Position numbers and translations under genes: made by a program. A stretch of DNA of 64,000 bases, from positions 310,001 to 374,000 of IMG/VR virus record IMGVR_UViG_3300024239_000011; one strand, 5' to 3'. The notes under the pieces were generated by a model. That model searched no databases and had not been told where the DNA came from. It worked only from the letters and a program-made list of their open reading frames with translations. This document shows, piece by piece, positions 12,753 to 60,861 of the stretch (its first letter is position 1; each line of letters starts with the position of its first letter).

Positions 12753-13037
12753 ATGACGGCAGTATCGCAAAGAGAATTCGAGCGTATGGCGCAAGCAGTT
12801 TACCAACAGGAATTGAAAACTCCATGGTTTGCGCCAGTGGGGTTGATGCGCAGCATCAACCCCACGGACTACAATCCGTGTGCGGAGATTGCGTCGGTAC
12901 CTTATATAAGCCTTCAAACCCGACTGAAGATGGCGGGGCTTGATACGTTCGAGGTCGTATGTGACGAGCGGAACAACACCACCGAAACAAAGTCCAAGGT
13001 TGATTACTTGGCAGCTATTCGAGAGGTAGTGGGATAA
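12753..13037 (+). CDS. Mini-protein of tail-sheath-like motifs with C-terminal DYL tag
   Basis: PWFAPVGLMR and FEVVCDERNNT resemble conserved T4 gp18-family motifs. Ends KVDYLAAIREVVG. Confidence 0.6.
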   Translation: MTAVSQREFERMAQAVYQQELKTPWFAPVGLMRSINPTDYNPCAEIASVPYISLQTRLKMAGLDTFEVVCDERNNTTETKSKVDYLAAIREVVG

Positions 13038-13351
13038 TGACGACCGTAGGCGCACTTATCACGGAGAAGGCATACTTGATTCTGTCCGAGCATCATAAGG
13101 ATTTATGGGATCGGCTTGGTATCGAGGTTATTGGGATTGAAGAACTTGACGGCGATGAAGTAGGTGACGAGGGTCCAAACCTACTTCTTGATTTGAAGGT
13201 AAAACGCGATCTCCCGGATGGCACTTTACTGTTCGTGCGGGTCGGGCGTGTGGTTGAAGGTGAAAACGGTCCCGTAATGGACAAGAGTGCCTATGGGGCA
13301 ACGCCACTCATTGATGGGGAGCGTCGGGACGATCTGACGTGGTGGGGATGA
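13037..13351 (+). CDS. Hypothetical protein
   Basis: TAATG-coupled ORF. Confidence 0.6.
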   Translation: MTTVGALITEKAYLILSEHHKDLWDRLGIEVIGIEELDGDEVGDEGPNLLLDLKVKRDLPDGTLLFVRVGRVVEGENGPVMDKSAYGATPLIDGERRDDLTWWG

Positions 13352-13560
13352 GTTGGACGAAGCATGTTGTTTTCTTCACGCCATTGTATCCAGCACTTCC
13401 TTGTGTTCCGGTGAACCAAACAAAAATTCTCCTTACCCAGGAAATAATTGACCGGATGCGTCAGGCATATATACAACACAAAAAACAAGAACTACTAGAC
13501 GATTCTATCGTCTACCAGCACTCATCCCCACGAGGAAAGATCGAATATTATGAGCAATAA
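13348..13560 (+). CDS. Hypothetical protein, weak resemblance to a portal (gp20-family) segment
   Basis: ATGA-coupled ORF. KKQELLDDSIVY recalls the portal ELLEDxxxIYR motif. Confidence 0.45.
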   Translation: MSWTKHVVFFTPLYPALPCVPVNQTKILLTQEIIDRMRQAYIQHKKQELLDDSIVYQHSSPRGKIEYYEQ

Positions 13561-13762
13561 AATAATATGCCTGGAAATCCAGGCAGTGGGGCGTGGACTT
13601 CGTGAGGTTTCAGGGTATATCGAATTCGTTAATTTTACACCGTCATGTGACGACGATGTGGAACTGGAACGTCTCGCAAACGATATTGAATCCTTGGAAA
13701 CCATTGAAACCGAACAGGTTGATTATCTTGGTATTATCCGACAAGTCATTGGGTCTAAATAA
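13550..13762 (+). CDS. Small protein with C-terminal DYL tag
   Basis: Ends QVDYLGIIRQVIGSK. Confidence 0.6.
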   Translation: MSNKIICLEIQAVGRGLREVSGYIEFVNFTPSCDDDVELERLANDIESLETIETEQVDYLGIIRQVIGSK

Positions 13763-13788
13763 GTCAAACTGTCAATCAGAGGTGGTAA

Positions 13789-14172
13789 ATGGTCAATTTT
13801 GATATGCGCATTCTGGTAGTCGATGACTATGCTACGATGCAGAAGATTGAGCGCAATTTGCTCAAGCAGATTGGTTTCGGGAATGTTGATACCGCAAATG
13901 ACGGCTCCCAGGCACTTCAAATGCTTCGGTTGCAGCACTATGATCTTATCCTGTCCGATTGGAACATGGAGCCGATGACCGGTCTGATGTTGTTGCGCGA
14001 AGTGCGCAATGACCCTGCCCTGAAGCATATCCCATTCATCATGGTAACTGCGGAAACTAAACAGGAAAATGTGATCGCTGCTCGGGAAGCAGGGGTGTCC
14101 AACTATATAATTAAACCCTTTACGGCGGATACATTAAAGAAGAAACTACAGTCGGTTATCGGGGATTTCTAA
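13789..14172 (+). CDS. cheY: Chemotaxis response regulator CheY
   Basis: Single receiver domain: ILVVDD, phosphoacceptor in SDWNMEPM, MVTAE, YIIKPF. GAGG RBS. Confidence 0.92.
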   Translation: MVNFDMRILVVDDYATMQKIERNLLKQIGFGNVDTANDGSQALQMLRLQHYDLILSDWNMEPMTGLMLLREVRNDPALKHIPFIMVTAETKQENVIAAREAGVSNYIIKPFTADTLKKKLQSVIGDF

Positions 14173-14624
14173 TGTTCTCTCGAAAGCGCGATGCGCTTGA
14201 ACTCCTATGCACGTTGTACGTCATTTTTAAACTGGCAAAAACCAAAGGCGACCTCGCCCTTGAGTCGCATTGCGAGCAACCAGAACACAGCCCGATATTT
14301 GTTAATTCCAGCTTGTCAAAAGCAGAAAAGGTCGTACTTGCGGATTCGATGCGACTCTTAACACTCGGGTTAGATAGTCCTGATGATGTGGAACGTTTTA
14401 TGGTCGGTATGTTTGTCATATCCGTCAAACATACCGACAGGATGGATGTGATTATTGAAGCATTTGTGGCACATTGCAAAGGCTATGCACCGCAAATTTC
14501 CATTGAATTTGCTCGTGCCGCGTTCGGTATTAAAAACCGCCCGACTTTTCAGGAAACTGAGGAAGCAATCACTAACCTCCTTCTTGATGATTATCAGTAT
14601 AAATGGCAACATCACGGGAAATAA
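14172..14624 (+). CDS. Soluble MotA-like protein (two cytoplasmic segments fused, no TM helices)
   Basis: LELLCTLY..LALESHCEQPEHSPIF..DSMRLLTLG and GYAPQISIEFAR..RPTFQETEE match the MotA cytoplasmic loop and C-tail. Coupled to cheY. Confidence 0.75.
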   Translation: MFSRKRDALELLCTLYVIFKLAKTKGDLALESHCEQPEHSPIFVNSSLSKAEKVVLADSMRLLTLGLDSPDDVERFMVGMFVISVKHTDRMDVIIEAFVAHCKGYAPQISIEFARAAFGIKNRPTFQETEEAITNLLLDDYQYKWQHHGK

Positions 14625-17219: not shown

Positions 17220-17579
17220 ATGAAGAAATTCTTGCTCGCAACCGTTTTGTTCTTCCCGTTGTTTGCCAACGCGGCAGATTTGGAACATACGCTGATTGTT
17301 GAAATGGGCTTTCAACATGCGGTCTCGGTGCCTGTTAGCGGATCGGAGGCGTGCAAGAATTTGGCGTTCGACATCTACGCGAAGAAGAATGGTAATAATG
17401 GCGCACCACGCGGGGCACAAACTCTTCGGGTTGGGTCTGCTAATGTTGATATTGGACAGCGTATCATCGACCCTTGGTTCTTCGATTGCGTCAACTCAAA
17501 ACTCGGTAAAATCACGCATAGCATTATGTGTGAAAAAGGCGAGTGCAGCGTCATTGAGTACAAGGGAGACATAAAATGA
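17220..17579 (+). CDS. Secreted 4-Cys small protein (paralog 3)
   Basis: Signal peptide ending FANA; EAC..DCVNSKLG..C...C. Confidence 0.65.
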   Translation: MKKFLLATVLFFPLFANAADLEHTLIVEMGFQHAVSVPVSGSEACKNLAFDIYAKKNGNNGAPRGAQTLRVGSANVDIGQRIIDPWFFDCVNSKLGKITHSIMCEKGECSVIEYKGDIK

Positions 17580-18169
17580 ACATTACCGGAGACACATTCA
17601 CTGCCGACGCCGAAGTTATCGAGTACGATTGTTTTCAAATTCCGATTTTCATTCATACCATCAAATCAGTGGCAGACCTTCGTGGTGGTTGGATGTTCGA
17701 AGATGGTATTCATTATGCGGTCAACGAGGTTCGGGATGAGAAGGCGCTTCGCAGCGTCCTCATTGAGAAACTGCACGAATCCTTGAATGATTTCAATGCT
17801 CCACCGGCTGGACATGTGCGGGGTGTGATTAACTCGGCGTTGTGCCATAGTAATCGGCTGACCCCGCATGATATTGACGAAATCTACGCCATGGGAATCA
17901 ATCCCATTCGATTTATCAATGGGGCATTGGTGATCTGGGGACAACGCATCGTCAACCGGGGTAGCCCCCAGAACATGTATTGGGACCGGGGTAGGGGGAA
18001 ATTTGACCTCAATCCATGGTTTGAGCAGTTCAGCACGACCACAAAGATACGTTGGGAGTTTCCCATGATTTGGGATATGTCGAAACTTTTGGCGTCCGCA
18101 CCCGCACCAGAAGCCCTGAAAACCGATTACCTTGCCGCCATCCATGACATCTGCAAGGCGGAACAATGA
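17576..18169 (+). CDS. Tail-sheath-fragment protein with C-terminal DYL tag
   Basis: PPAGHVRGVI..DEIYAMGINPIRFING..VIWGQR matches gp18-family PAG..RG..LY..GINP..V(I/L)WG. Ends KTDYLAAIHDICKAEQ. Confidence 0.7.
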   Translation: MNITGDTFTADAEVIEYDCFQIPIFIHTIKSVADLRGGWMFEDGIHYAVNEVRDEKALRSVLIEKLHESLNDFNAPPAGHVRGVINSALCHSNRLTPHDIDEIYAMGINPIRFINGALVIWGQRIVNRGSPQNMYWDRGRGKFDLNPWFEQFSTTTKIRWEFPMIWDMSKLLASAPAPEALKTDYLAAIHDICKAEQ

Positions 18170-19069: not shown

Positions 19070-19417
19070 ATGAGTGACCAGTTCGAGAAGAAAGCCAGTG
19101 ATGTCCTGGCACGGTTCCCCGCTCCGTCCAATTGGGCGGCTGGCGTCAAAGCCCAGCGTCTTGAACTGGCGTTGACCAATGCTCTGCGTGAAACATTTGA
19201 GCAAGGTCGCGCCTCGGTCGGCGGAAACACGGACGGGCTGGTGGCAATTGCCAAAGCAACGAAAAAATTCTTGTTGGCGTTGCATGACTATCGCGAGCGC
19301 CCGCTTGATGAATACAATGTGGCAACCGATGACCGTATTTCCTGTGTTGAAGACCTCGAAGACGAACTGATCGATGTTGTGAATGCCAATAAGCATGTGT
19401 TCGGGGATCACCAATGA
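19070..19417 (+). CDS. Hypothetical protein
   Basis: ORF tiling. Confidence 0.6.
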   Translation: MSDQFEKKASDVLARFPAPSNWAAGVKAQRLELALTNALRETFEQGRASVGGNTDGLVAIAKATKKFLLALHDYRERPLDEYNVATDDRISCVEDLEDELIDVVNANKHVFGDHQ

Positions 19418-19962
19418 TTACGTTCTATACCTCCAAGCCTATTGGAATCTTGAAAAAAGAACGTCCATGGGTACGTTTGACGGTTGATCCTGATCTGGTT
19501 AGTAATCTCGCGACAACATTGAATAACGAGCGAAATATTTCGGCGGATGATCTTATTGCGCGTGCCCGGACATGGCAACGTGACCGCAACTGGGATACTT
19601 TCTTTACTGCGTTTGAATGGCTTGCTTCGTGTGGTGATGATGTTGCTGTTAAACGCGGCGGGTTTCCCAAAAGCTCTCTGTTGTTTTTCTTTCAAGACCC
19701 AAATATCGCCATCAAATTTCGTTTTAAATTTCAAAGCGAATTTGCGGTCGATGGTATTAGTGTGTTGGGCACGGGTAAATTGCGTATCCATGATACCAGC
19801 GAACTAAATTGGGAGCAAACCCAACAGTTTTTTGAGCGTTTTGCGCAAATGTATCCGCAGATGCTTGAACAATGTATTATCGAAGCTATGGGGTCGTCCC
19901 CAAATGATGCCGGTGGGATGAACCCATACGACGCAATCCATGCTGTGGTAGGGGCACGTTAA
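19414..19962 (+). CDS. Hypothetical protein (F..A..F.F family) with degenerate C-terminal tag
   Basis: FFFQDPNIAIKFRFKF; ends NPYDAIHAVVGAR. Confidence 0.6.
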   Translation: MITFYTSKPIGILKKERPWVRLTVDPDLVSNLATTLNNERNISADDLIARARTWQRDRNWDTFFTAFEWLASCGDDVAVKRGGFPKSSLLFFFQDPNIAIKFRFKFQSEFAVDGISVLGTGKLRIHDTSELNWEQTQQFFERFAQMYPQMLEQCIIEAMGSSPNDAGGMNPYDAIHAVVGAR

Positions 19963-24882: not shown

Positions 24883-25197
24883 ATGATAACAGTTCGCATT
24901 CCCGGTGTAAGAACCGAGGAAGAATGGCGTACAGTTGCCATTTCCGATAATATTGAAATATTGTCGAATGTTTCGTGGGAGCAAGAAGAAGGGCGACGCC
25001 AATTTTTGCGTCTTTGGCAGTATCTTCTAAAAGGATGCCTCTTTGACTTTTATAGCATTACATCTTCAAGTGGTAAAGTAATTATTACTGCCATCAATCC
25101 TAATTGGTTTGATTTTGTAATTGAGACTGTACCGGATAAACATATGGTTGATTTTTTTGAAGATCAACGCGAAGCAGCAAATCGCTGTCTCGATTAA
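24883..25197 (+). CDS. Hypothetical protein (paralog of next gene)
   Basis: Shared ILSN..W..G..FV..PD..MVDFFE.QR. Confidence 0.6.
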   Translation: MITVRIPGVRTEEEWRTVAISDNIEILSNVSWEQEEGRRQFLRLWQYLLKGCLFDFYSITSSSGKVIITAINPNWFDFVIETVPDKHMVDFFEDQREAANRCLD

Positions 25198-25215
25198 TAT
25201 CAAACGGTTGGTGCT

Positions 25216-25497
25216 ATGGAAAATGATCTAAATTCCTATGAGGGGAAGGTAGACTTCCTTTCTAACGACCCCGATGAGCTTGCTTGTGCAAAGAAAGAAT
25301 GGGACATCTTCTGGCAATCTCTGATTGCTGGAACGGTACATGATAACTATAATTTTCATAATGATGCCCATGGACGTATTCTGATAATCCCGCGTAACGG
25401 CGACTTGATGACGTTCGTGGTCGATAAACGCCCAGACGAAAACATGGTTGATTTCTTTGAAGCGCAACGCCAAGAGGCGATCCGCGATCTCGACTAA
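25216..25497 (+). CDS. Hypothetical protein (paralog of previous gene)
   Basis: Same motifs as the previous gene. Confidence 0.6.
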   Translation: MENDLNSYEGKVDFLSNDPDELACAKKEWDIFWQSLIAGTVHDNYNFHNDAHGRILIIPRNGDLMTFVVDKRPDENMVDFFEAQRQEAIRDLD

Positions 25498-26967: not shown

Positions 26968-27732
26968 TCACCATTGAAAATGGTATGTTTTGAAAAACGC
27001 CCGCCAATGTGTGCATTCATTGGCGGCGAAAGTTTCGCGCATGAACAAGTAGTTTCCGGTGGATGTTGATAGGTAATGCGCCGGGGCGTCGAACTGGATG
27101 CCCATGGCGATATCCTCCATTCCTTTGTACAAGACTGAGACGATATTCGTGGGTACACGCTCGTCTTCAATGACATACATACTGTCGTTGATGATAAAGG
27201 AAACCGGTTTCCCACCGAACGAGACATCAGACACGGCACACATAGCACTCGTGGTTCTGCGTTCGAATAAGTCGAGTGCGGTAGCATGATTCATCATGAC
27301 CACATTACCACGACCTCGGCGCGTTTTTGCGGCGCACAAGTTTCCGCCTCGATTTATGATGATGAACGGTGAAACACCATCGCCCCCGCAAAAGGTAAAT
27401 TTTCGCGGTGAATAATAGGCTGTCAGGTCAACTGCCTCTGGGTCAGCCGTGATAAGGCTGATAAAGTATTTCTCTGCTTCAGCTAGATCGGTTACTTTGA
27501 CCCACGTGCCTTTTCCATCAAACGGGCGACACACATCCATGCGCAGTTTGATCGTTGGGCGAGGCGCATCCGGTGCATATGCTTTGGTAATGAACCAAGC
27601 TGTATACTGACGCTCGAATTCGGTTGTCGGATTTGTTGGTGGTTGTGGGTATTCCCGTGGCGTTTGATCTACCATGGTCACCAATGCCGATACCGTGTCT
27701 CCGGTATGGATACCAAGAAATGGATGCTGCAT
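26968..27732 (-). CDS. Truncated, divergent major-capsid (gp23-family)-like protein
   Basis: INRGGNLCAAKTRRGRGNVVMM and VSVLYKG..DA resemble gp23 ANxIAxxTRRGKGN and VGYKG..DAG. Confidence 0.6.
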   Translation of the reverse strand: MQHPFLGIHTGDTVSALVTMVDQTPREYPQPPTNPTTEFERQYTAWFITKAYAPDAPRPTIKLRMDVCRPFDGKGTWVKVTDLAEAEKYFISLITADPEAVDLTAYYSPRKFTFCGGDGVSPFIIINRGGNLCAAKTRRGRGNVVMMNHATALDLFERRTTSAMCAVSDVSFGGKPVSFIINDSMYVIEDERVPTNIVSVLYKGMEDIAMGIQFDAPAHYLSTSTGNYLFMRETFAANECTHWRAFFKTYHFQW

Positions 27733-28628
27733 TAGAACTTTCCCACTATTTCTTTGATCTGGTCGATGGCTGACGCAAAGCGGGTTTTCTGCTTATAATG
27801 CGATGAATGATGCGGTAGATCGTACTCTGGTCGATCCAAGCGAAACCGCAATGCGCGTGTCATGTTATGCCAATATGGACGCTCGTTTTTGTACAACAGG
27901 TTCTCCACGGGCAAGCAAAGCCACAGATCGTTGTCATGCCCCGTACAGACGTATCCGACCGCATCAATCTCGCCCGGTCCCTTATAGAATTGATGAACCA
28001 CGTCAGGCTTAACGTCGTCGGAGGTAACAAAATGACATCCACCTACCTGTCCTATAACCGGGTATCCTGCCATTTCATCAAGCCATGGATATCCCTTGTA
28101 GTCGGCAAGAGAACTCACATCCGGTTTGGTAAACAGAGACTTGACCATATGCGGTCGCGGATCACCGCCCAGAACCCGATGGTACGTCTCAGCCTGGGCG
28201 AACCATGTCCCGGCGAACCCGCGTCGGTTTTCTTGCCCCAGAGTGTTGGCCCGGCTAATCATCCAATGAATATGGGCTTCGGTGGGGTTACGCCGTTCAT
28301 ATCGGAACGCAAAATCAGCGAGACTATCCCAGTCCTGTAGCCGTTCTTCTGCGCTCCGCTGAAGAACGATTTGTTCGGCATGCTTAATCGAATTGACCTT
28401 GTGCCATTCTGCACGCGGATCGCCAATCTCAAGTGTTACGACTTTGATATTGAGGCGGGGATCAGGGCTAAGATACCCCTTGGCAATAGACCATGGATTG
28501 ATGGGATCGGTCGGTGGTTCTATTTCAGGATAAATCAATTCCATTATCAACGCATGTACTTTACCCACACTTCCTTTTGTGGTCTGTATACCCAAAAATG
28601 GGTGTAGAAATTCTGATCGGTTGGTCAT
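27732..28628 (-). CDS. Truncated, divergent major-capsid (gp23-family)-like protein
   Basis: GIQTTKGSVGKVHAL (cf. GVQPMTGPTGxxFAL), ANTLGQENRRG, FYKGPGEIDAVGYVC. Ends AIDQIKEIVGKF. Confidence 0.6.
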   Translation of the reverse strand: MTNRSEFLHPFLGIQTTKGSVGKVHALIMELIYPEIEPPTDPINPWSIAKGYLSPDPRLNIKVVTLEIGDPRAEWHKVNSIKHAEQIVLQRSAEERLQDWDSLADFAFRYERRNPTEAHIHWMISRANTLGQENRRGFAGTWFAQAETYHRVLGGDPRPHMVKSLFTKPDVSSLADYKGYPWLDEMAGYPVIGQVGGCHFVTSDDVKPDVVHQFYKGPGEIDAVGYVCTGHDNDLWLCLPVENLLYKNERPYWHNMTRALRFRLDRPEYDLPHHSSHYKQKTRFASAIDQIKEIVGKF

Positions 28629-29350: not shown

Positions 29351-29359
29351 GATTGATCC

Positions 29360-29405: not shown

Positions 29406-29422
29406 AACGATTAGGTGAAGCA

Positions 29423-48891: not shown

Positions 48892-49241
48892 CTTTCTAGC
48901 CCTTCGGCACATGAAATATTGATCGCGATGAGCGTATCGAGTTTTTCTGGTGTTGGGTTCTCGTAGATTTCCAAGGTTCTACGATCCACGAATGCCGATA
49001 ACCGCAGCAAGTTGGTTCGAAGGTCCGCCGGAAGTGGGCAGTCGTCGGACATCGCATCAGCCTGTACAACCGTCCAGAAACGCTGATTGTACTTTAACGC
49101 ATCGTTGAGGTTGTCGGGGTTCCAGTTATTACGAAGGTCTTGTAATCGCCCAATAGCCGTGCGCAATACACGTGCTTGCACTAGGCGATCACTAGCAAGT
49201 ACCCGATTTGCTTTTTGATATGCGCCGATCCCATTAGACAT
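48888..49241 (-). CDS. flaF: Flagellar biosynthesis regulator FlaF
   Basis: AYQ..ALKYNQRFWT..PLPADLRTNLLRLSAFV..LIAINISCAEGL. Confidence 0.9.
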   Translation of the reverse strand: MSNGIGAYQKANRVLASDRLVQARVLRTAIGRLQDLRNNWNPDNLNDALKYNQRFWTVVQADAMSDDCPLPADLRTNLLRLSAFVDRRTLEIYENPTPEKLDTLIAINISCAEGLES

Positions 49242-49617
49242 TTAGAAGCTCTCCTTCGTACTCGATCAGTTTTTGGCATTCGCGTAGGGCTTTGTAATAC
49301 TGCCCAGCAACAAGATGTTGTTGGATTGCGATAATGAAGGGGTACATAGATGGTGCCGCTTTCATGAGTTCGCCAACGTGATCAAAGAAATCTGTTTGGT
49401 ATTTTTCGATATTGTCCGTGTCTACGTACATCATCTGAATGAACAGGTACGCGACTTTCGATGGGGTGTCGGCGGTTTCAACCGTCAGCACATCTTTCTG
49501 ACGAAGAATTGGCACATCATTGTGGATAGTAATTTCCGTTTTACCGGTTTCAGCACCGGTAATCACGGCGGTACCGACAATGATTTTCTCATTGGGTTTG
49601 AGAACAAGTTTTAGCAT
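49234..49617 (-). CDS. flbT: Flagellin translational regulator FlbT
   Basis: LKLVLKPNEKIIVG..ILRQKDVL..ADTP..YLFIQMMY..YYKALRECQKLIEYE. Confidence 0.92.
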   Translation of the reverse strand: MLKLVLKPNEKIIVGTAVITGAETGKTEITIHNDVPILRQKDVLTVETADTPSKVAYLFIQMMYVDTDNIEKYQTDFFDHVGELMKAAPSMYPFIIAIQQHLVAGQYYKALRECQKLIEYEGELLNV

Positions 49618-49664
49618 TTCATTTGCTCCGCAAGGTCGGGGGTGCCAAAGCACCCCCTATCCTA

Positions 49665-50504
49665 TTAACCGAAAAGACGCAGAACGCCTTGAGCGGACTG
49701 ATTCGCCATGCTCAGCGAGTTAAGAGCAAGCTGGCTACGGGTCTGAAGGGCGAGCAGCTTGGCGCTTTCGTCATTCATGTCCGCATTGGTCAGATCATCG
49801 GCACCAGCACGGTGAGTGGTGATCATGTTCTTGGTGAAATCCGAGCGAATCTTCAGCAAGCTATTGGAGCTACCCAGTGTTGCTGCCGTTGAACGGACGG
49901 TGGACATCGCAGTAGACAAAAGCGCAATGTCGGCATCGATTGCAGCAGTACCAGTTGCCAGGGTCGCATTACCCCAGTCCCCAGCCGCAGTCACCGCCAA
50001 TCCGGTTGCATCACTAGCCGTACCGGTGACAGACATTGATGCGGAACCATCACGATTGAAAGTGACCGTGAGACTGTCCGGGGTACCCTTGATGAGGTTC
50101 ACACCGTCATAGGTAGAGTCCGATGCAATCTTGTCCAACTGAGTACGAAGTGCATCGTACTGAGTTTTGAAAGCAGTGCGGTCAGCCGCAACCGAAGATG
50201 CCTTAGCTTGCTCAGCAAGACCCTTCATTTGTTTCAAAACACCTTCAATGGCGGTTAGACCATCGGTTGCAGTCTTAACGGTATTCATGGCATTGGTAAT
50301 GCCATCCTTTAGAGAAAACAAGTCGTCGGCAGTATCATAGAGATTTTTGGCCCGGAAATAGTTCACCGGGTCATCAATTGCACTGGCAACTCGCTTACCA
50401 GATGCTAAGCGTCCTTGTACGACGCTCATATCACTGTCCGTCCGTTGAAGAGACAGCAGAACATTGCGAACACTTGCATTGAGGGAAATGTTGTCCGTAG
50501 ACAT
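49665..50504 (-). CDS. Flagellin (short alphaproteobacterial type)
   Basis: SVRNVLLSLQ..RLASGKRVASAIDDP, YDGVNL, ADMNDESAKLLALQTRSQL..SMANQSAQGVLRLF. Confidence 0.95.
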   Translation of the reverse strand: MSTDNISLNASVRNVLLSLQRTDSDMSVVQGRLASGKRVASAIDDPVNYFRAKNLYDTADDLFSLKDGITNAMNTVKTATDGLTAIEGVLKQMKGLAEQAKASSVAADRTAFKTQYDALRTQLDKIASDSTYDGVNLIKGTPDSLTVTFNRDGSASMSVTGTASDATGLAVTAAGDWGNATLATGTAAIDADIALLSTAMSTVRSTAATLGSSNSLLKIRSDFTKNMITTHRAGADDLTNADMNDESAKLLALQTRSQLALNSLSMANQSAQGVLRLFG

Positions 50505-53349: not shown

Positions 53350-53378
53350 GAAAAGGGCGGGATTTCTCCCGCCCTTTT
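53350..53378. terminator. Bidirectional terminator
   Basis: aaaagggcggga-tttc-tcccgccctttt. Confidence 0.8.
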
Positions 53379-53790
53379 ACACTACGTCCCGAATGCATTG
53401 GAGGTAATCAACCGGTGCAAATACCGCATCAGATTCAATCTCGGTCGCCGCCAGTTTCATAAACTGACCATGGCGATCCTTGAGAACCTTGTAGCCATCA
53501 GGGCAGTCTTCGAGAATAAGATCGGGAATTGCAGACATTTCCCGTGGACCACGAATGGTACGTACTTCTTTGTCAGCGTGTCGTAAGAAATCAGTGGAAC
53601 GCACCATCAAGCACAGAGATTTCCGGTCTATTTGTGATTGAGTATGTGCGTTAAGAATGGTTTCCGCCATAGTATTGAAGGAGCGAACCCCAAAAAATCC
53701 AGCCGCACGAATTTCCCCTGCGGTAATCACCCTATAACGATCACCAAGCAGCCCCGTAACTTCTATTTGAGACAATAACCGCTGTGTCAT
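53377..53790 (-). CDS. Small protein with C-terminal DYL tag (paralog of 54097)
   Basis: Ends PVDYLQCIRDVV; IPDLIL..YKVLKDRHG. Confidence 0.6.
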   Translation of the reverse strand: MTQRLLSQIEVTGLLGDRYRVITAGEIRAAGFFGVRSFNTMAETILNAHTQSQIDRKSLCLMVRSTDFLRHADKEVRTIRGPREMSAIPDLILEDCPDGYKVLKDRHGQFMKLAATEIESDAVFAPVDYLQCIRDVV

Positions 53791-54113
53791 TCTACAACTT
53801 CCTTCGTGATTTGTAAAAAATCAACCCCATCCGCGATGGCTTCGTTAACCAGCTTTGCCCAGCGGTCGTCGTAATCGTGATCCGACCACCCGGCACACTC
53901 AGGCTGCCCACGGAGCCAATTCCGAACCTGCATACCTTCCCGGAAATGAACCGGGTGTGGAATGTAGGGACCGGACGGATTCATGGGATGGGTGGTCGAA
54001 ATGACCGGTGAAACCGTACCAAATTCCTTCTTGTAATCGCGGAAGAGGGAAATCCCATCATTCCCCAACCATTCTTTCAAACGTTGAATAAGCATCTTAG
54101 CCACCTTGTACAC
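53787..54113 (-). CDS. Small protein with C-terminal DFL tag
   Basis: HFREGMQVRNWLR; ends GVDFLQITKEVVE. Confidence 0.6.
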   Translation of the reverse strand: MYKVAKMLIQRLKEWLGNDGISLFRDYKKEFGTVSPVISTTHPMNPSGPYIPHPVHFREGMQVRNWLRGQPECAGWSDHDYDDRWAKLVNEAIADGVDFLQITKEVVE

Positions 54114-54480
54114 ATTGTTTGATACAATCTAAGTAGTCAACCGGAGGACGTAGGGCGGATTCCCATAATGTCCCCTCAACATCTCTCAATATTTTGTATC
54201 CAGTATATCCCCGCTGGATGACCAAATCCGGAATTTTTAATAATGGGACTATGAAAACCGGCACCACAAAGAGATCATCCGGGGCGCCGAAGTATGGGAT
54301 ATGAAGGCACAGTTTCTTACCCGATGTATGAGCCTCGTCATAATGCTCTTCAAGTGCCGGAACGGTATCGTGAGCCGTATGAATAAGTTCTCGGTATGAT
54401 ACCGTCAGGTACCGTTTCCCCATTAGACGATCTAATTCTGGTTGCGTTAGTATCCGGCGCATAACGTAGAATTCAAGCAT
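54097..54480 (-). CDS. Small protein with C-terminal DYL tag (paralog of 53377)
   Basis: Ends PVDYLDCIKQCVQGG; IPDLVI..YKILRD. Confidence 0.6.
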   Translation of the reverse strand: MLEFYVMRRILTQPELDRLMGKRYLTVSYRELIHTAHDTVPALEEHYDEAHTSGKKLCLHIPYFGAPDDLFVVPVFIVPLLKIPDLVIQRGYTGYKILRDVEGTLWESALRPPVDYLDCIKQCVQGG

Positions 54481-55528: not shown

Positions 55529-56743
55529 TTAGAAAGTATACCAATTCAACGGAATCAGATCGCGGATGCTCTCGATCTTGGTTGAGGTGCCTGTGTTCTT
55601 CAGCACGAAGTCACGGACCATAGCGAAGGCGTTCTTGCCATCCCAAACTTGGAACGACAACGGACGAAGGCGGCTGTCCAACTTCTGCGAAGCCCCCAGT
55701 GCGTATTCCTTCTTCGCCTGCTTTTCATCGCCGCCCACTGCCTTCAGAATCTCTTCTTTGGCGGTCGCGACGTAGGTTTCCAACTGCTTGGCTTGTTTGG
55801 CGATTTCATGGTTCAACGCATCGGTGAATGCACTCAGTCGGTTGCGATCAGCTTCCTCCATGAATGCCATGGCGTCATCCATACTCTCGCTGAGAACGAG
55901 TTCCCACACGTTCTTCTCAATGGCGATAAGTTCTTTCGCCTTGTGAATACGGCAGTAATGTTCGTTCTTGACCTTGTACATCCGCCCATCAGCAAAGCGG
56001 ATCACATAACCTTCGCCTTCAGTTTCCCCCTTTGTTCTCTCCAAGAAAGCCTGGATATCTGCAATACTCGACCCGAACACCTCGACTACCGGAATACCAA
56101 ACGGCTGTGCCATCTGCACCATGTCTTCATAGGGCACGTAGTAGCCCTTGATCATATGTCGAATAGCGGTCAACACCAGCATGTCTTCCGGGTAATCTAC
56201 GACAATTCTTTGTTTACGCGAACACCACTCAAAGATAGGGGTAAAGCCGTTCTCCAACATGGATGCCATGAAATTTACGTAGCCAATTTCATCATGCCCG
56301 AACGCAAATTCCTGCGCAGGGATAGCAACGTCAGTCGGACCCATCTTGGTGCAGAGGATCATCTTTCCGCCCAGAATCATGGGATGGATCATGCTGCCAT
56401 CCATCTTCGCCATGATGCGGAGATCAGACGACCAATTGACCTGATGCGGTTGAGTTTCCTCGCGTTCACCCACATTGAAGAATTTGTGATAAACACGTGC
56501 CAAAATCTTCCCCGTGGCAGAGCAGAACTTGATGCCACGAGCTTCCCGACGAACAATCGCCTTTAGACGATCACGGGGATCATCTATAGAAATCAAATCA
56601 GGGAAAGTATGGGCGAAGTTGACCGCGTAATTCACAACGGTAAAGCCGTCGCGCTCGCCTACAATCCACTCTTCACCACGGACGCCATTCTCGTCGGTCA
56701 ACGCCCACAACAGGTCGTCTATATGCTGTATTTGCGGAAACAC
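55529..56743 (-). CDS. T4 Rnl1-type RNA ligase
   Basis: REARGIKF, YHKFFNVGE, KMDGSMI, TPIFEW, EGYVI, YKVK. Confidence 0.9.
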   Translation of the reverse strand: MFPQIQHIDDLLWALTDENGVRGEEWIVGERDGFTVVNYAVNFAHTFPDLISIDDPRDRLKAIVRREARGIKFCSATGKILARVYHKFFNVGEREETQPHQVNWSSDLRIMAKMDGSMIHPMILGGKMILCTKMGPTDVAIPAQEFAFGHDEIGYVNFMASMLENGFTPIFEWCSRKQRIVVDYPEDMLVLTAIRHMIKGYYVPYEDMVQMAQPFGIPVVEVFGSSIADIQAFLERTKGETEGEGYVIRFADGRMYKVKNEHYCRIHKAKELIAIEKNVWELVLSESMDDAMAFMEEADRNRLSAFTDALNHEIAKQAKQLETYVATAKEEILKAVGGDEKQAKKEYALGASQKLDSRLRPLSFQVWDGKNAFAMVRDFVLKNTGTSTKIESIRDLIPLNWYTF

Positions 56744-56864: not shown

Positions 56865-56893
56865 GACCCAAATTCTCACAATGGGCATGGACG

Positions 56894-58307: not shown

Positions 58308-58667
58308 TCATAAAATCGGGTACAGGATGGGTATATCAGGGAAGAGTTCCATCTGACGGTCATCGGGGATCACCCCGGTATACGGGTGGATGGAATCGCC
58401 GTATCCCCACCGCGCCCGATGCCGAACGACATCGGGCGCGGTGGACATCACATAGACCAAGAATTCGCTTTTGTTGTCCTCACACACCTCGTCCCAATGG
58501 ACTTCGGTGATGGGGTCGCGCTCTTCCTCGGTTACACCGGTACTGACCACATAGACGTAGGCGACCTTCTCGATACCAGTCAAGACAGCGGGAACCCAAC
58601 GTTCCCGCTCCGTGATATCGGGGTGCTTAAACAGCACCCAATCACCTATGCGAAGGTAGTCAGACAT
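58308..58667 (-). CDS. Hypothetical protein
   Basis: Follows clpP closely. Confidence 0.55.
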   Translation of the reverse strand: MSDYLRIGDWVLFKHPDITERERWVPAVLTGIEKVAYVYVVSTGVTEEERDPITEVHWDEVCEDNKSEFLVYVMSTAPDVVRHRARWGYGDSIHPYTGVIPDDRQMELFPDIPILYPIL

Positions 58668-58670
58668 TGG

Positions 58671-59258
58671 TTACGGACGCTTCGAGATCACGTCGTCAAC
58701 CAGACCCAGCGCCTTCGCCTCTTCGGCTGACAGAAACGTATCGCGGTCCAACTTGTCTTCCCATACCTCAAGGGCAACGCCGGTATGTTCGGCATACTTC
58801 TTGGTCAGCTTGTCCTTGATGTTCTGAATTTCCTTCGCCTGGATTTGGATGTCACTACACATACCACCAGCACCACCGGACGGCTGGTGTACCATGACGC
58901 GAGCATTTGGCAGGATGAAACGCTTACCCTTAGCACCAGCCATGAGTAAGAACGAACCCATCGATGCTGCCTGACCAATACACACAGTTGAGACATCCGG
59001 CTTGATGAACTGCATCGTGTCGTAAATGGCAAGACCGGAGGTTACTACACCGCCCGGTGAATTGATGTACATATGAATGTCCGCGTTCGGATCATCACTC
59101 TCCAAGAAAAGAAGCTGGGCACAAACCAGTTCAGCAGTGTGGTCATCAATAGCACCATTGATGAACAGCACTCGTTCTTTCATCAATCTGCTGAAAAGAT
59201 CGTAGCTGCGTTCACCGCGACCACTCTGTTCAACAACAATCGGAACAAGATTCGACAT
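58671..59258 (-). CDS. clpP: ATP-dependent Clp protease proteolytic subunit
   Basis: YDLFSRL, YINSPGG, AASMGS, MVHQP, DRD. Confidence 0.97.
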
Positions 59259-59363
59259 TAGACCCTCTCAGGATTATGAATGCCCTGACCGTATCAGAGC
59301 ATGGAAGTTTCGGCCAATTTGTTTTATGGATAGAGCGGTAATCAAGTTGATCTGATCCATGGG

Positions 59364-60656
59364 TTAAGACCCACCGTTCGACGGGATATATGGCACAGTA
59401 GTCCCAAACGGAGCTTCAATCTTGCTTCCCTTGTTATTAATAATGAACAAGGTGTCGCAGAAATAAGGATCACCCCATCCTTTATTTGGCAATCCATCAG
59501 TAAACATGACGAACTGCTCTGGTACCATATCCATTCGACGCATAAATTCCCAATTTGCCTCGAATCGGGTACCACCACCACCTTTCACCCATTGATAATC
59601 GAACATCGTGTCAGCGTTGTCCGGGGTGAAAATGTGATAGCTGTCCTTGTAGACTTTGGTGTCAAACGACCAGATATGGATTTTGTAGTCCGGGAACTGA
59701 TCCATAATTCCTTTCGTTTCCGTCAGAAAATCACGAATCATTTCCTCGGTAATACTAGCAGATGCATCAATACCAACGTGGATTTCAATAGTGTCCTCGT
59801 AGATCATACCGGGAAGAATGATTCCGAGGTGAGCGCACTTACGGCTTGGCTTGGTGTAGCTGTAATCCTCTTTGACAAGGCTCTGTACTGTGCGATTGAG
59901 CATTTGGCGCCAGTCAAGCTGCGGATCAGCGATATCCGCAATTAGGCGTCGTAAAGACGCCGGGACAGCACCAGCCCCGACCACCTGAGCCGCATTGATC
60001 ATGGCGTTCCGTATTTCGTTGCGGACTTGCTGCAACTCTTCCTCGGACATTTCCGGCGGACCATTACCGTCGCCTTGGATACGAACCTTGACTTTCTTCT
60101 GCCCACTTCCGGTATCGGCGCCTAGGTCAAGATGCATGTCCATCGTCATTTCGACTTCAACGCCACGCTTCTTCAGGTCTTCATAAACCTGCTCGGACGA
60201 CCACGGCTCGGGGAACATGAACCGTTCATCGTACAGCCCGACGCGCTGGACCTTACCATCCTTGTCCTTGCTGTCCTTGTCCTTGACCCGCAATTTCTCG
60301 CGAACCGGCATGCTTCCGATGTCTTCCTTCATCAGCATGCCGTTCACAACGTAATCGTTGGCGTTGTTCCACAGCCCCGGATCACGTTCGCCCCGCCGCC
60401 CGAAGTGGTCGAGAATGCAATGCCCGACCTCATGTACCAATACGAACACAAGTTCAGGCTTGGTCAGTGACGCCACAAATTCCGGATTGTAATAGAGTTT
60501 GCGGAAATCGGTTGCCATGGTGGGGCACCAATCACTCGCTTCCTCAAGCTCCATATGGGAAATGATGTTCCCAAAGAACGTGTGCTTGAAAAGCAGATGC
60601 GTCTTGGCAAACACAATCTGTTTTTCAATCTCATCCTTGAACAAATTCGAAGTCAT
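59364..60656 (-). CDS. DUF2201-type metallopeptidase plus VWA-like protein
   Basis: TMATD, HEVGH, WNNANDYVVN; VWA IDASAS, FDT, GGGTRF, FTDG. Confidence 0.88.
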   Translation of the reverse strand: MTSNLFKDEIEKQIVFAKTHLLFKHTFFGNIISHMELEEASDWCPTMATDFRKLYYNPEFVASLTKPELVFVLVHEVGHCILDHFGRRGERDPGLWNNANDYVVNGMLMKEDIGSMPVREKLRVKDKDSKDKDGKVQRVGLYDERFMFPEPWSSEQVYEDLKKRGVEVEMTMDMHLDLGADTGSGQKKVKVRIQGDGNGPPEMSEEELQQVRNEIRNAMINAAQVVGAGAVPASLRRLIADIADPQLDWRQMLNRTVQSLVKEDYSYTKPSRKCAHLGIILPGMIYEDTIEIHVGIDASASITEEMIRDFLTETKGIMDQFPDYKIHIWSFDTKVYKDSYHIFTPDNADTMFDYQWVKGGGGTRFEANWEFMRRMDMVPEQFVMFTDGLPNKGWGDPYFCDTLFIINNKGSKIEAPFGTTVPYIPSNGGS

Positions 60657-60657
60657 A

Positions 60658-60861
60658 TTACCAACCTTCGGAAATTACATCTCTGATCAACGTTAGATAA
60701 TTGATACTGTCGTTTTTAGGCGACGCAAACACTACCCATTTACACCCATCAAACAAATAAAGGTTTCCATCTATTGTGTTGAGGTAAACGTCATTGCGGG
60801 TAGGTGATGGCAAGTGTTCAGCAGACGGCGTGTGATAAGTAATTGTTTCAATGATCATCAA
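60658..60861 (-). CDS. Mini-protein: one tail-fibre repeat plus C-terminal NYL tag
   Basis: NDVYLNTIDGNLYLFDGCKWVV matches GQLWFNTTDNKMYLFNGTTWVV of the fibre at 1950. Ends INYLTLIRDVISEGW. Confidence 0.65.
   Translation of the reverse strand: MMIIETITYHTPSAEHLPSPTRNDVYLNTIDGNLYLFDGCKWVVFASPKNDSINYLTLIRDVISEGW

What the first reader, a model, noticed from the sequence alone, without database searches (positions are those of the whole stretch)
12753..60861. Shared C-terminal helix tag (D-Y-L-x-x-I-R/K-x-V-V) on at least seven unrelated small proteins
Seen: the extreme C-termini are KVDYLAAIREVVG* (12753-13037), QVDYLGIIRQVIGSK* (13550-13762), KTDYLAAIHDICKAEQ* (17576-18169), PVDYLQCIRDVV* (53377-53790), GVDFLQITKEVVE* (53787-54113), PVDYLDCIKQCVQGG* (54097-54480) and SINYLTLIRDVISEGW* (60658-60861). 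Weaker versions are NPYDAIHAVVGAR* (19414) and SAIDQIKEIVGKF* (27732). The bodies are unrelated except for one paralog pair, the genes lie on both strands over 48 kb, and codons differ, so this is conserved as peptide rather than as a DNA repeat. None of the recognisable enzymes carries it. I know of no described signal with this consensus. Inference: a portable amphipathic docking helix that sends diverse cargo to one hub. Candidate hubs are the phage ClpP or the MoxR-VWA/metallopeptidase machinery (one tagged gene sits inside that gene run), a scaffold, or the virion.
Basis: partly seen in the sequence, partly recalled or inferred. Interest (0 to 1): 0.9.

Follow-up and report, generated by a model that had tools for sequence, protein, structure and literature searches.

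The report
Shared C-terminal peptide on phage ORFans
At least eleven otherwise unrelated small proteins of one uncultivated giant phage (over 540 kb) end in the same 10-residue helical peptide, most likely an address label that docks them to one common partner, possibly the assembling phage head; the partner is not identified.

Summary
All seven ORFs end in [VTI]-D-[YF]-L-x-x-I-[RKH]-x-[VIC]-[VI], 0-4 residues before the stop. A loose regex finds 6 hits in the ~20,500-residue proteome, all C-terminal (shuffles: 0.48 hits anywhere, 0.011 C-terminal). Codons differ, so selection acts on the peptide.

Bodies are unrelated except one paralogue pair. The residues after the tag encode the next gene's ribosome-binding site.

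The window is positions 310,001-374,000 of a 543-kb IMG/VR phage contig; the phage also occurs on an 870-kb ENA contig. Walking and pattern scans found four more tagged ORFs outside the window and none in other genomes.

One new member is a catalytically dead homologue of the T4 gp21 prohead protease. Other recognisable bodies are a tail-sheath-like piece and a fibre-like hairpin.

The phage's DNA polymerase carries a different tail (D-L-F-S-F), so the tag is not the clamp-binding motif.

Best reading (about 0.3): a C-terminal prohead-core targeting and possibly processing peptide, comparable to the N-terminal capsid targeting sequence of T4 internal proteins. Rivals: docking to the adjacent phage CheY, to the MoxR/VWA-peptidase/ClpP block, or to a host hub. 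The motif is new; the principle is known.

The parts
12753..13037 (+). Tagged ORF, 94 aa, ORFan. Tag VDYLAAIREVVG at 12999-13034.
   Evidence: No homologue among 5.8 billion proteins except itself. Its stop overlaps the next gene's ATG, and GAGGT inside the tag codons acts as that gene's SD.
13550..13762 (+). Tagged ORF, 70 aa. Tag VDYLGIIRQVIGSK at 13718-13759. The CheY gene starts 27 nt downstream.
17576..18169 (+). Tagged ORF, 197 aa. Residues 76-138 resemble the conserved C-terminal domain of phage tail sheaths. Tag TDYLAAIHDICKAEQ at 18122-18166.
   Evidence: tblastn to sheath genes of Vibrio, Pseudomonas and Rhizobium phages, E 5e-6 to 5e-3.
53377..53790 (-). Tagged ORF, 137 aa, last gene of the Rnl1 operon, followed by an intrinsic terminator. 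Tag VDYLQCIRDVV at 53380-53412.
   Evidence: AlphaFold model: body 1-111, residues 112-128 with pLDDT below 50, helix 129-136.
53787..54113 (-). Tagged ORF, 102-108 aa. Variant tag VDFLQITKEVVE at 53790-53825.
   Evidence: No body similarity to its two neighbours.
54097..54480 (-). Tagged ORF, 127 aa, paralogue of 53377-53790 (27% identity). Tag VDYLDCIKQCVQGG at 54100-54141.
60658..60861 (-). Tagged ORF, 66-67 aa. It is translationally coupled between the DUF7487 (homing-endonuclease-like) gene and the DUF2201 peptidase-VWA gene. Residues 20-44 resemble the DUF7360-like hairpin of the protein at 1944-3284. Tag INYLTLIRDVISEGW at 60661-60705.
19414..19962 (+). Probable weak member, 182 aa, ends ...NPYDAIHAVVGAR*.
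   Evidence: PWM only 6.7 bits. Shares the C-terminus-specific half-motif I-[RKH]-x-V-V-G-x-x*.
27732..28628 (-). Probable weak member, 298 aa, ends ...SAIDQIKEIVGKF*.
   Evidence: Half-motif. Its second half nearly matches the out-of-window member ...IRAIVGKY*. No family or PDB match.
24883..25497 (+). Paralogue pair (24883-25197 and 25216-25497) ending ...MVDFFEDQREAANRCLD* and ...MVDFFEAQRQEAIRDLD*. Possible divergent relatives of the tag (V-D-F-F...R-E in register).
   Evidence: Not separable from background by PWM (0.8 bits). Listed as uncertain.
13789..14172 (+). Candidate hub, not a tag carrier: a single-domain CheY, 50% identical to E. coli CheY, with D12, D13, D57, T87, Y106 and K109 kept.
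58308..63404 (-). Candidate hub block: MoxR AAA+ (62253-63404), DUF7487 (60858-62204), tagged ORF, DUF2201 metallopeptidase-VWA (59364-60656), ClpP (58671-59258) and a 119-aa ORF.

Best explanation
The peptide [VTI]-D-[YFH]-L-x-x-I-[RKH]-[EDQ]-[VI]-[VI] is a portable C-terminal docking helix. It is amphipathic, capped by Asp at its N-terminal end, and joined to each body by a flexible linker. It ties a set of at least eleven small, otherwise unrelated proteins of this giant phage to one common partner.

My most likely specific mechanism is that it is a prohead-core (capsid) targeting peptide, possibly also a processing site. It would then be the C-terminal counterpart of the N-terminal capsid targeting sequence that T4 uses to load internal proteins IPII and IPIII into the head. 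It would also correspond to the C-terminal propeptide that brings gp21-family prohead proteases into the core. Tagged proteins would be carried into the assembling head and either delivered to the next host with the DNA or removed during maturation.

The I-x-[E/D] inside the tag resembles the gp21 cleavage motif L/I-x-E. The protease could therefore cut the helix and free the cargo.

Shown: the tag exists, is selected as a peptide, is C-terminus-specific, sits on unrelated bodies, is confined to this phage, and is carried by a dead gp21 homologue.

Inferred: that it docks to a partner, that the partner is the prohead core, and that it is cleaved.
For: (1) Statistics and peptide-level conservation.

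(2) Modularity. Bodies are unrelated. Three have separate ancestries, all from virion morphogenesis:
- tail-sheath C-domain-like;
- a fibre-like DUF7360 hairpin;
- L195:10001-10435, a Peptidase_S77/gp21 homologue. Pfam gives E 4.6e-6, 26.7 bits, just below the 27-bit cut-off. An HMM I built from 7 gp21 homologues gives 68 bits, E 1.8e-20. It lacks the catalytic His and Ser.

(3) In that protein the tag follows the protease domain. This is where all 7 sampled gp21 homologues carry a junction motif, a linker and a terminal amphipathic helix.

(4) Literature.
- The C-terminal propeptide of the gp21-related protease of giant phage SPN3US is needed for its incorporation into proheads.
- T4 internal proteins and Alt carry a short terminal targeting sequence that binds the core and is cleaved by gp21 (PMC7411985).
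- The T4 sequence fused to GFP localises it to the core (PMC9958956).

(5) T4 IPII and IPIII start MKTYQEFIAE. The spacing Y-x3-I-x-E matches the tag's Y-x3-I-x-[E/D]. Position 8 is acidic in 8 of 11 tags.

(6) Linker plus terminal helix in the AlphaFold model (low confidence).

(7) The clamp-binding alternative is weakened. The phage's own polymerase ends ...DLFSF*, not with the tag.
Against: - No head gene module, true protease, scaffold or major capsid protein of this phage was found, so the proposed receptor is unseen.
- The gp21-like carrier is catalytically dead and sits among HNH endonucleases and small ORFans, not in a head operon.
- Tagged genes lie in arrays of accessory genes of the type usually expressed early.
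- The tag adds only 3.8 bits to the gp21-HMM score of its carrier. Shuffled tails reach that value (mean 65.1, max 69.4, against 68.4 observed). Homology of the tag to the gp21 junction is therefore not demonstrated.
- The likeness to the T4 targeting sequence is three residues.
- An HMM of the gp21 junction segment does not pick up the other tags.
- A sheath-like fragment is an odd cargo for a capsid.
- Cleavage after position 8 would remove only 2-7 residues.
- The hub assignment rests on analogy plus one informative member.
Confidence: 0.3

Rival explanations
1. CheY-docking peptide. The tags tether their bodies to the phage-encoded CheY, or to host CheY-P. The known models are the C-terminal helix of CheZ and the N-terminal peptide of FliM, which bind the alpha4-beta5-alpha5 face of CheY.
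For: - A bona fide CheY (50% identical to E. coli CheY, all phospho-signalling residues kept) starts 27 nt downstream of tagged gene 13550-13762. It lies 750 nt from 12753-13037, on the same strand.
- A second receiver gene lies 6 kb from the out-of-window tag cluster.
- The phage also carries FliG, flagellin, FlaF, FlbT and GGDEF/EAL genes.
- E. coli CheZ ends ...SQDQVDDLLDSLGF* and FliM starts MGDSILSQAEIDALLN. Both share the core [IV]-D-x-L with the tag. CheZ's QVDDLL scores in the top 0.12% of proteome positions on the first-half PWM.
- CheZ has the same architecture: body, flexible linker, extreme C-terminal helix ending in Gly plus an aromatic residue.
Against: - The full-length PWM does not recognise the CheZ or FliM peptides.
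- The register of hydrophobic residues differs after the Leu.
- Only 2-3 of 11 tagged genes are near CheY.
- I compared the tag with about five known docking peptides, so one four-residue match is expected by chance.
- Nothing explains why a dead prohead protease or a sheath fragment should bind CheY.
Confidence: 0.12
2. Recognition tag for the phage's own proteolysis or remodelling block (MoxR AAA+, DUF2201 metallopeptidase-VWA, ClpP). The VWA domain or an adaptor binds the tag. The tagged proteins are then remodelled or degraded on schedule.
For: - Tagged gene 60658-60861 is translationally coupled between the DUF7487 gene and the DUF2201 gene, inside the MoxR...ClpP operon.
- Three more tagged genes end the next operon on the same strand, 4.5 kb downstream.
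- The phage also encodes an ATE_N/ATE_C aminoacyl-tRNA-protein transferase, which makes N-degrons. It therefore invests in controlled proteolysis.
- The invariant Asp could be a ligand for the metal site (MIDAS) of the VWA domain (inference only).
Against: - Known ClpX C-degrons depend on the terminal residues. Here the last 0-6 residues vary and are dictated by the next gene's SD.
- MoxR ATPases are not known partners of ClpP (my knowledge).
- The member next to the VWA gene has Asn in place of the Asp.
- The DUF7487 gene looks like an inserted homing endonuclease, so the small ORF may have arrived with it.
- Seven of the 11 tagged genes are 40 kb or more away, or elsewhere in the genome.
Confidence: 0.12
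3. Docking to an unidentified host hub (for example RNA polymerase, ribosome, divisome or a chaperone), or mutual association of the tagged proteins through their helices into hetero-oligomers.
For: - The generic properties of the tag fit a short linear motif: amphipathic face Y2, L3, I6, V9, V10; conserved D1 and R7; a linker before it.
- No partner encoded in the ~150 kb examined is compelling.
- Three tagged genes are adjacent in each of two clusters, which would suit co-assembly.
Against: - Nothing positive; this is the default.
- The tag is absent from every other genome searched. A conserved host hub would more likely have been exploited by related phages too, but no related phages are available to check.
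Confidence: 0.2
4. Recognition or modification site for the five tandem radical-SAM/SPASM peptide-maturase-like enzymes (4483-10890). The tagged proteins would be post-translationally modified at the conserved Tyr, Arg or Asp.
For: - All five enzymes match peptide- and protein-modifying rSAM/SPASM families best (PapB, anaerobic sulfatase maturase, nif11-type, HxsB and others). All score far below the family cut-offs, so they form new subfamilies.
- The first tagged gene lies four genes downstream in the same co-directional array.
Against: - The other tagged genes are 40 kb or more away, on the other strand, or elsewhere in the genome.
- Carriers are up to 197 aa.
- No Cys is conserved.
- The candidate reactive residues vary (Y/F/H; R/K/H).
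- One motif for five diverged enzymes is unexpected.
- The pattern of conserved residues is that of an amphipathic helix face, not of a cross-link motif.
Confidence: 0.05
5. Sliding-clamp-binding tail, like the S-L-D-F-L-[FYL] C-termini of T4 gp43, gp55 and gp33.
For: - T4 tails read from NC_000866...KASLDFLFG*...SPSLDFLYEAND*...KTNTLDFLL*. They share a hydrophobic-D-[FY]-L core and the extreme C-terminal position with the tag.
- These tails are interchangeable and preceded by a variable linker (PMC2988020).
Against: - The phage's own family-B polymerase (C-terminal half) ends ...ELDTDLFSF*. A neighbouring ROS/MucR-like protein ends ...ELASDLFSW*. That is the likely clamp tail, and it is a different motif.
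- gp55 tails of distant T4-like phages do not keep L-D-F-L, so the resemblance to T4 is not ancestral.
Confidence: 0.03
6. No shared function. The tag would be the only surviving trace of common descent in a fast-evolving paralogue family, a structural last helix.
For: - Members cluster in tandem. One pair is still recognisably paralogous.
- The same sequence occurs as an internal helix in ordinary proteins elsewhere.
Against: - Three bodies have independent homology to different untagged protein families.
- Sizes range from 46 to 197 aa.
- The tag is separated from the body by Pro- or polar-rich linkers and by a low-confidence segment in the model.
- Conservation is sharply confined to 10-11 residues.
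Confidence: 0.08

Closest known systems
T4 capsid targeting sequence (N-terminal MKTYQEFIAE of IPII and IPIII, cleaved by gp21)
   Same: - A peptide of about 10 residues shared by small proteins and sufficient to address cargo to one assembly (PMC9958956, PMC7411985).
- The spacing aromatic-x3-I-x-E is the same.
- The phage shows T4-type genes: gp21-like, Rnl1 and a sheath-like domain.
   Different: - The tag is C-terminal, not N-terminal.
- Only three residues match.
- Cleavage and encapsidation are untested here.
- Position 8 is Glu in only 3 of 11 tags (Asp in 5).
C-terminal targeting propeptide of gp21-family prohead proteases (SPN3US gp245; T4 gp21 tail ...DDAYMALAEAMKKAL*)
   Same: - A tagged protein is a gp21 homologue. 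Its tag follows the protease domain, where homologues have a junction, a linker and a terminal amphipathic helix.
- In SPN3US that C-terminal part is needed for incorporation into proheads (PMC7411985).
   Different: - In known phages the tail belongs to the protease alone and is not reported on other proteins.
- The carrier here lacks the catalytic His and Ser.
- Sequence homology of the tag to the family's tail is not significant.
T4 sliding-clamp-binding C-termini of gp43, gp55 and gp33
   Same: - The logic is the same: unrelated proteins, flexible linker, interchangeable hydrophobic-acidic extreme C-terminus, one hub (PMC2988020).
- The hydrophobic-D-[FY]-L core is shared.
   Different: - This phage's polymerase uses another tail (DLFSF).
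- The tag is longer, with seven more constrained positions.
- Its carriers are ORFans, not replication or transcription proteins.
CheY-binding peptides (CheZ C-terminus, FliM N-terminus)
   Same: - A terminal amphipathic helix on a flexible linker that binds a small hub protein.
- The core [IV]-D-x-L is shared.
- A true CheY is encoded next to two tagged genes.
   Different: - The rest of the motif and the hydrophobic register differ.
- Binding has not been tested.
Cargo-loading peptides of encapsulins and encapsulation peptides of bacterial microcompartments (from my knowledge; not tested here)
   Same: Short terminal helical or extended peptides that load diverse cargo into a protein shell. 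Encapsulin shells have the HK97 phage-capsid fold.
   Different: - Their cargo is enzymes.
- No shell gene of those types appeared among the roughly 90 window and flank proteins I scanned against Pfam, nor in the precomputed Pfam labels of the flanking loci (about 150 kb examined in all).
- The consensus sequences differ.

Membership tests
T4-type capsid targeting sequence | Short peptide shared by several otherwise unrelated small proteins of one phage | tested here: met
   Eleven strong carriers; bodies unrelated.
T4-type capsid targeting sequence | N-terminal position, removed by the prohead protease | tested here: not met
   The tag is always 0-6 residues from the C-terminus. Removal is not testable here.
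T4-type capsid targeting sequence | Ends in the gp21 cleavage motif L/I-x-E | tested here: inconclusive
   I-x-E in 3, I-x-D in 5, T-x-E in 1, I-x-Q in 2 and I-x-A in 1 of 11 tags. The specificity of this phage's protease is unknown.
T4-type capsid targeting sequence | Directs cargo into the prohead core | not testable with these tools
   Needs virion proteomics or reporter fusions.
Peptidase_S77 (gp21 prohead protease), for carrier L195:10001-10435 | Sequence match to the family profile | tested here: met
   Pfam E 4.6e-6, 26.7 bits against a cut-off of 27. An HMM of 7 gp21 homologues gives 68.4 bits, E 1.8e-20.
Peptidase_S77 (gp21 prohead protease), for carrier L195:10001-10435 | Catalytic His (GELNHP) and Ser (GVSSRG) | tested here: not met
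   His is replaced by Phe. The Ser-Ser pair is replaced by Ala-Ala. It is a pseudo-protease.
Clamp-binding C-terminal tail (T4 gp43/gp55/gp33 type) | Present on the phage's own DNA polymerase | tested here: not met
   The polymerase C-terminal half ends ...ELDTDLFSF*. Only it and a ROS/MucR-like protein carry that tail.
Clamp-binding C-terminal tail (T4 gp43/gp55/gp33 type) | Hydrophobic and acidic extreme C-terminus after a variable linker | tested here: met
   This is a generic feature and not diagnostic.
CheY-binding peptide (CheZ-C / FliM-N) | Consensus S-Q-x-x-[IV]-D-x-L-L | tested here: inconclusive
   Only [VI]-D-x-L is shared. The full PWM fails on CheZ and FliM.
CheY-binding peptide (CheZ-C / FliM-N) | Binds the alpha4-beta5-alpha5 face of CheY | not testable with these tools
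   No multimer modelling is available. The candidate CheY exists and is intact.
ClpXP C-terminal degron (ssrA-like or MuA-like) | Conserved last 3-6 residues with a free carboxylate | tested here: not met
   The last residues are none, G, E, GSK, QGG, GKY, GGL, KAEQ, SEGW, GCAV or GAGL. They overlap the next gene's SD.
RiPP or protein substrate of rSAM/SPASM maturases | Precursor genes adjacent to the maturase; conserved reactive residues (Cys or a fixed aromatic/basic pair) | tested here: not met
   No tagged gene adjoins the maturases: the nearest lies four genes downstream, two more 3-7 kb downstream, and the rest are distant. Cys is not conserved. Y/F/H and R/K/H vary.

The most novel reading that the evidence does not exclude
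A giant phage uses a C-terminal address peptide to load a varied set of small proteins into its head for delivery into the next host. The peptide may derive from the tail of its prohead protease. The set includes disabled copies of virion parts (a dead protease and a sheath fragment). This would be the first C-terminal, multi-cargo capsid-loading signal in a tailed phage, mirroring encapsulin cargo loading.

An equally new alternative is that a phage-encoded CheY serves as a docking hub for a family of phage effectors.
Probability: 0.3. Interest if true: 0.8.

Novelty: new variant of a known kind. Interest (0 to 1): 0.62.

Why it matters
Most genes of giant phages are ORFans with no handle for function. 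A shared address peptide groups at least eleven of them into one functional class. It also gives a direct experimental handle: fuse the 12-residue tag to a reporter, find the partner, and ask where the cargo goes.

If the partner is the prohead core, the tag would define the set of proteins this phage injects. It would also offer a compact C-terminal loading signal for phage-capsid engineering, complementing the N-terminal T4 sequence.

If the partner is CheY or the MoxR/ClpP block, it would reveal a phage-built signalling or proteolysis hub.

The side finding has its own value. The polymerase and a ROS/MucR-like protein share a different tail, so this phage uses at least two separate C-terminal address codes.

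Tried and rejected
- DNA repeat or mobile-element origin: rejected. Codons differ and no repeat family covers the tags.
- Artefact of the next gene's ribosome-binding site: this explains only the variable residues after the tag.
- Homologues of tagged proteins: none for 53377-53790 or 12753-13037. The neighbouring 321-aa and DUF7487 proteins have no informative relative in IMG/VR: the former finds only itself, the latter only itself and one 27%-identity partial match.
- A profile of the seven tails against 1.84 billion representatives returned only five of the seeds.
- Pfam and PHROGs on tagged proteins: nothing except a weak PHROG for the hairpin. PDB sequence search: nothing. Foldseek with the one model: nothing.
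- Pattern scans of IMG/VR and JGI metagenomes (cut at 120 rows): no other genome has several C-terminal copies. Other hits are internal helices or non-coding frames. L073 was a chance hit in a high-GC bacterium.
- Clamp-binding idea: tested by walking to the polymerase and disfavoured. gp55 tails of distant T4-like phages differ.
- The search for diverse CheZ tails returned only enterobacterial sequences and was not useful.
- Likeness of FliF's FliG-binding tail (...VVALVIRQWI...) to the tag: PWM negative.
- Homology of the tag to the gp21 junction motif: not significant.
- The idea that 28625-29407, 27732-28628 and 26968-27732 are a degenerate gp21-gp22-gp23 trio: no support.
- Looking for a repeated promoter to sample the genome: none found.

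Full report
**1. What the window is**

The window matches nothing in the phage or plasmid collections at DNA level. It is positions 310,001-374,000 of IMGVR_UViG_3300024239_000011 (= Ga0247724_1000001, 543,035 bp). Near-identical sequence (99.3-100%) occurs in several other samples, including an 869,618-bp ENA contig.

Gene content is that of a giant phage with many auxiliary genes:
- T4-type RNA ligase 1
- GIY-YIG, HNH and DUF7487 homing-endonuclease-like genes
- thymidylate synthase
- ClpP
- MoxR AAA+ with a DUF2201 metallopeptidase-VWA protein
- five tandem radical-SAM/SPASM genes
- CheY, flagellin, FlbT, FlaF and GGDEF/EAL proteins
- an Aas-like acyltransferase/ligase
- long arrays of small ORFans

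Yes. All seven termini translate as reported.

- A loose regex has six hits in 20,544 residues, all 0-4 residues from a stop. Shuffles give 0.48 hits overall and 0.011 at C-termini.
- A leave-one-out PWM puts the seven at the top of all positions.
- Among the C-termini of all 746 six-frame ORFs the scores are bimodal: 27-38 bits for the seven, at most 6.7 for the rest.
- A motif-free comparison of C-terminal 16-mers with internal 16-mers gives 14 high-scoring pairs, against a mean of 1.0 and a maximum of 6 in 500 controls.
- Synonymous codons differ throughout and only 11-24 of 33 nt are shared. The peptide is conserved, not the DNA.
- The 0-4 residues after the tag overlap the Shine-Dalgarno sequence or start codon of the next gene. 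This explains why they vary.

**3. Are the bodies unrelated?**

Only 53377-53790 and 54097-54480 are paralogues (27% identity). BLASTP and hhalign find nothing else.

Three bodies have independent ancestry:
- 17576-18169 contains a stretch like the conserved C-terminal domain of tail sheaths.
- 60658-60861 shares a DUF7360-like hairpin with the untagged protein at 1944-3284.
- An out-of-window member is a gp21 homologue (see section 4).

The peptide is therefore modular. An AlphaFold model of 53377-53790 has mean pLDDT 62, so it is only indicative. It shows a body (residues 1-111), a segment with pLDDT below 50 (112-128), and a terminal helix (129-136).

**4. How far does the tag reach?**

Beyond the right end of the window lies an eighth member, a 76-aa ORF ending ...SDYLGAIRAIVGKY* (L159:4270-4500). 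It sits between the two halves of a split family-B DNA polymerase gene.

A further 23 kb to the right and 26 kb to the left hold no tag.

Three degenerate DNA patterns were scanned over IMG/VR.
- They gave 21, 31 and 13 hits in the whole collection, of which 2, 3 and 3 lie in this one contig.
- One hit revealed a new cluster elsewhere in the genome (L174 = L195) with three more tagged ORFs:
  - ...EQVDYLAAIHEIVGCAV* (144 aa)
  - ...KPVDHLQAIRDIVGAGL* (162-175 aa)
  - ...KPDYLQAIRDIVGGL* (46 aa)
- A divergent fourth ends ...TDALAAKIKEIYKLRG*.

This gives eleven strong members. The consensus is [VTISP]-D10N1-Y9F1H1-L11-x-x-I10T1-R7H2K2-(D5E3Q2A1)-[VIC]-[VIC]-(G in 6 of the 10 tags that extend to that position).

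No other genome in IMG/VR, or in the first 120 metagenome hits, carries several C-terminal copies. Elsewhere the same sequence occurs as an ordinary internal helix.

A profile of the seven tails against 1.84 billion protein representatives returned only five of the seeds. The tagged proteins have no homologues.

**5. Which hub? Tests made**

*(a) Sliding clamp.* T4 gp43, gp55 and gp33 end ...SLDFLFG*...SLDFLYEAND* and ...TLDFLL*. These are interchangeable clamp-binding tails that follow variable linkers (PMC2988020). They are a close logical analogue and share a hydrophobic-D-[FY]-L core with the tag.

Two results argue against a clamp role for the tag.
- gp55 tails of distant T4-like phages do not keep that core.
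- This phage's own polymerase ends ...ELDTDLFSF*. A neighbouring ROS/MucR-like protein ends ...ELASDLFSW*. They are the only two ORFs with that tail in about 520 scanned. That is the likely clamp tail.

The D-Y-L tag is therefore a second, separate address code.

*(b) Prohead core.* The 144-aa tagged protein is a Peptidase_S77 (T4 gp21) homologue.
- Pfam gives E 4.6e-6, at the cut-off. An HMM of seven gp21 homologues gives 68 bits, E 1.8e-20.
- It lacks the catalytic His and Ser.
- Its tag follows the protease domain. This is where all seven sampled homologues have a conserved [YFWH]-x3-[IVL]-x-E-[SG] junction, a polar linker and a terminal amphipathic helix.

Published work supports a targeting role for such tails.
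- In giant phage SPN3US the C-terminal propeptide of the gp21-related protease is needed for its incorporation into proheads.
- T4 internal proteins and Alt use a short terminal targeting sequence that binds the core and is then cleaved by gp21 (PMC7411985).
- The T4 sequence also targets GFP to the core (PMC9958956).

T4 IPII and IPIII begin MKTYQEFIAE. The spacing Y-x3-I-x-E matches the tag's Y-x3-I-x-[E/D].

Caveats:
- The tag adds only 3.8 bits to the gp21-HMM score, and shuffled tails reach that value.
- The junction-segment HMM does not find the other tags.
- The true head genes were not located.

*(c) CheY.* The gene 27 nt downstream of tagged 13550-13762 encodes a CheY. It is 50% identical to E. 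coli CheY and keeps all key residues.

E. coli CheZ ends ...SQDQVDDLLDSLGF* and FliM begins MGDSILSQAEIDALLN. Both share [IV]-D-x-L with the tag. The full PWM does not recognise either peptide.

*(d) MoxR/VWA-peptidase/ClpP.* One tagged gene lies inside this operon and three lie just downstream. The variable last residues argue against a ClpX-type degron.

*(e) Radical-SAM/SPASM enzymes.* They resemble peptide maturases and lie upstream of the first tag cluster. The tag lacks a conserved reactive pair, and most carriers are distant.

**6. Conclusion**

The finding is a genuine, strongly non-random, phage-specific C-terminal peptide module on unrelated small proteins.

That it is a docking or address peptide is the natural reading. 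I put the sum of all single-partner models at about 0.8.

The partner is not established. The prohead-core reading is the best supported single model (0.3). It is the only one for which a carrier's identity is informative. All recognisable bodies are pieces of virion proteins. Terminal targeting peptides are documented in this protease family and in T4.

The principle is known (T4 capsid targeting sequence, clamp tails, encapsulin cargo peptides). The motif, its C-terminal position on many ORFans and its restriction to one giant phage are new. I therefore file it as a new variant of a known kind.

Noticed in passing
L159:7795-9489 (+) and L159:6753-7739 (-), 7-10 kb beyond the right end of the window: A second shared C-terminal tail exists in the same phage. 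The C-terminal half of the family-B DNA polymerase ends ...ELDTDLFSF*. The divergently transcribed 328-aa ROS/MucR-like protein ends ...ELASDLFSW*. No other ORF of about 520 scanned has it. It is probably the clamp-binding tail, which would make the MucR-like protein a clamp-tethered regulator in the style of T4 gp33/gp55.
   Followed up: partly
L161:7866-9497 and L161:16414-18108: The family-B DNA polymerase gene is split into two ORFs (543 and 564 aa). About 6.9 kb with some 15 small genes lies between them, including a glycine-cleavage H protein, an acetyltransferase and one tagged ORF.
   Followed up: no
window 4483-10890: Five tandem radical-SAM/SPASM paralogues (347-501 aa). Their best matches are peptide- and protein-modifying maturases, all far below family cut-offs. 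Neither substrate nor product is known.
   Followed up: partly
window 13789-14172, 48888-50504, 35850-37175, 63456-63938; L160:2242-3258; L195:16404-16796: The phage carries a flagellar, chemotaxis and c-di-GMP gene set: a true CheY, a second receiver, FliG, flagellin with FlbT and FlaF, a PAS-GGDEF protein and a GGDEF-EAL protein. FlaF/FlbT and ROS/MucR suggest an alphaproteobacterial host (my knowledge; not tested).
   Followed up: partly
window 58671-59258; L160:3603-4325: A bona fide ClpP (268 bits to Pfam CLP_protease) together with an ATE_N/ATE_C aminoacyl-tRNA-protein transferase, the enzyme type that creates N-degrons. The phage may reprogramme host Clp proteolysis.
   Followed up: no
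window 60858-62204; L161:1797-2945: The DUF7487 protein matches homing-endonuclease PHROGs (E 6e-16) and is present in two copies. In the window it sits between the MoxR and DUF2201 genes, which suggests an insertion into that operon.
   Followed up: partly
window 55529-56743 and 37222-38613: RNA-repair pair: T4-type RNA ligase 1 and a P-loop kinase plus metallophosphoesterase protein (Pnkp-like).
   Followed up: no
L195:10001-10435: A gp21 prohead-protease homologue with both catalytic residues replaced (His to Phe, Ser-Ser to Ala-Ala). It is encoded away from any head gene.
   Followed up: yes
L196-L202 (T4 and six distant T4-like phages): All sampled gp21 homologues keep [YFWH]-x3-[IVL]-x-E-[SG] right after the protease domain, followed by a polar linker and a lineage-specific terminal amphipathic helix. 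The spacing equals that of the T4 capsid targeting sequence Y-QEF-I-A-E. It may be a general self-processing site.
   Followed up: partly
window 24883-25197 and 25216-25497: A tandem paralogue pair with a highly conserved C-terminal 22 residues (...MVDFFE.QR..A.R.LD*), 74% identical over the last 66 nt.
   Followed up: no
L161:3047-4567, L161:51-1574, L162:1-5580; ENA record k141_178484: A PARP-like protein, a class-I aminoacyl-tRNA synthetase and a 4988-aa protein. The same phage occurs on an 869,618-bp contig, longer than the 543-kb IMG/VR version. I did not check whether that reflects the true genome size or an assembly artefact.
   Followed up: no
L010, L013, L017, L028 and several metagenome loci: A protein family of about 1240 aa in marine phages carries ...VDYLTAIRDVVNNN... 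as an internal segment at residue ~178. A soil-bacterial family has ...PKVDYLATIRHVVRRAL.... The tag sequence is therefore an ordinary helix elsewhere.
   Followed up: partly
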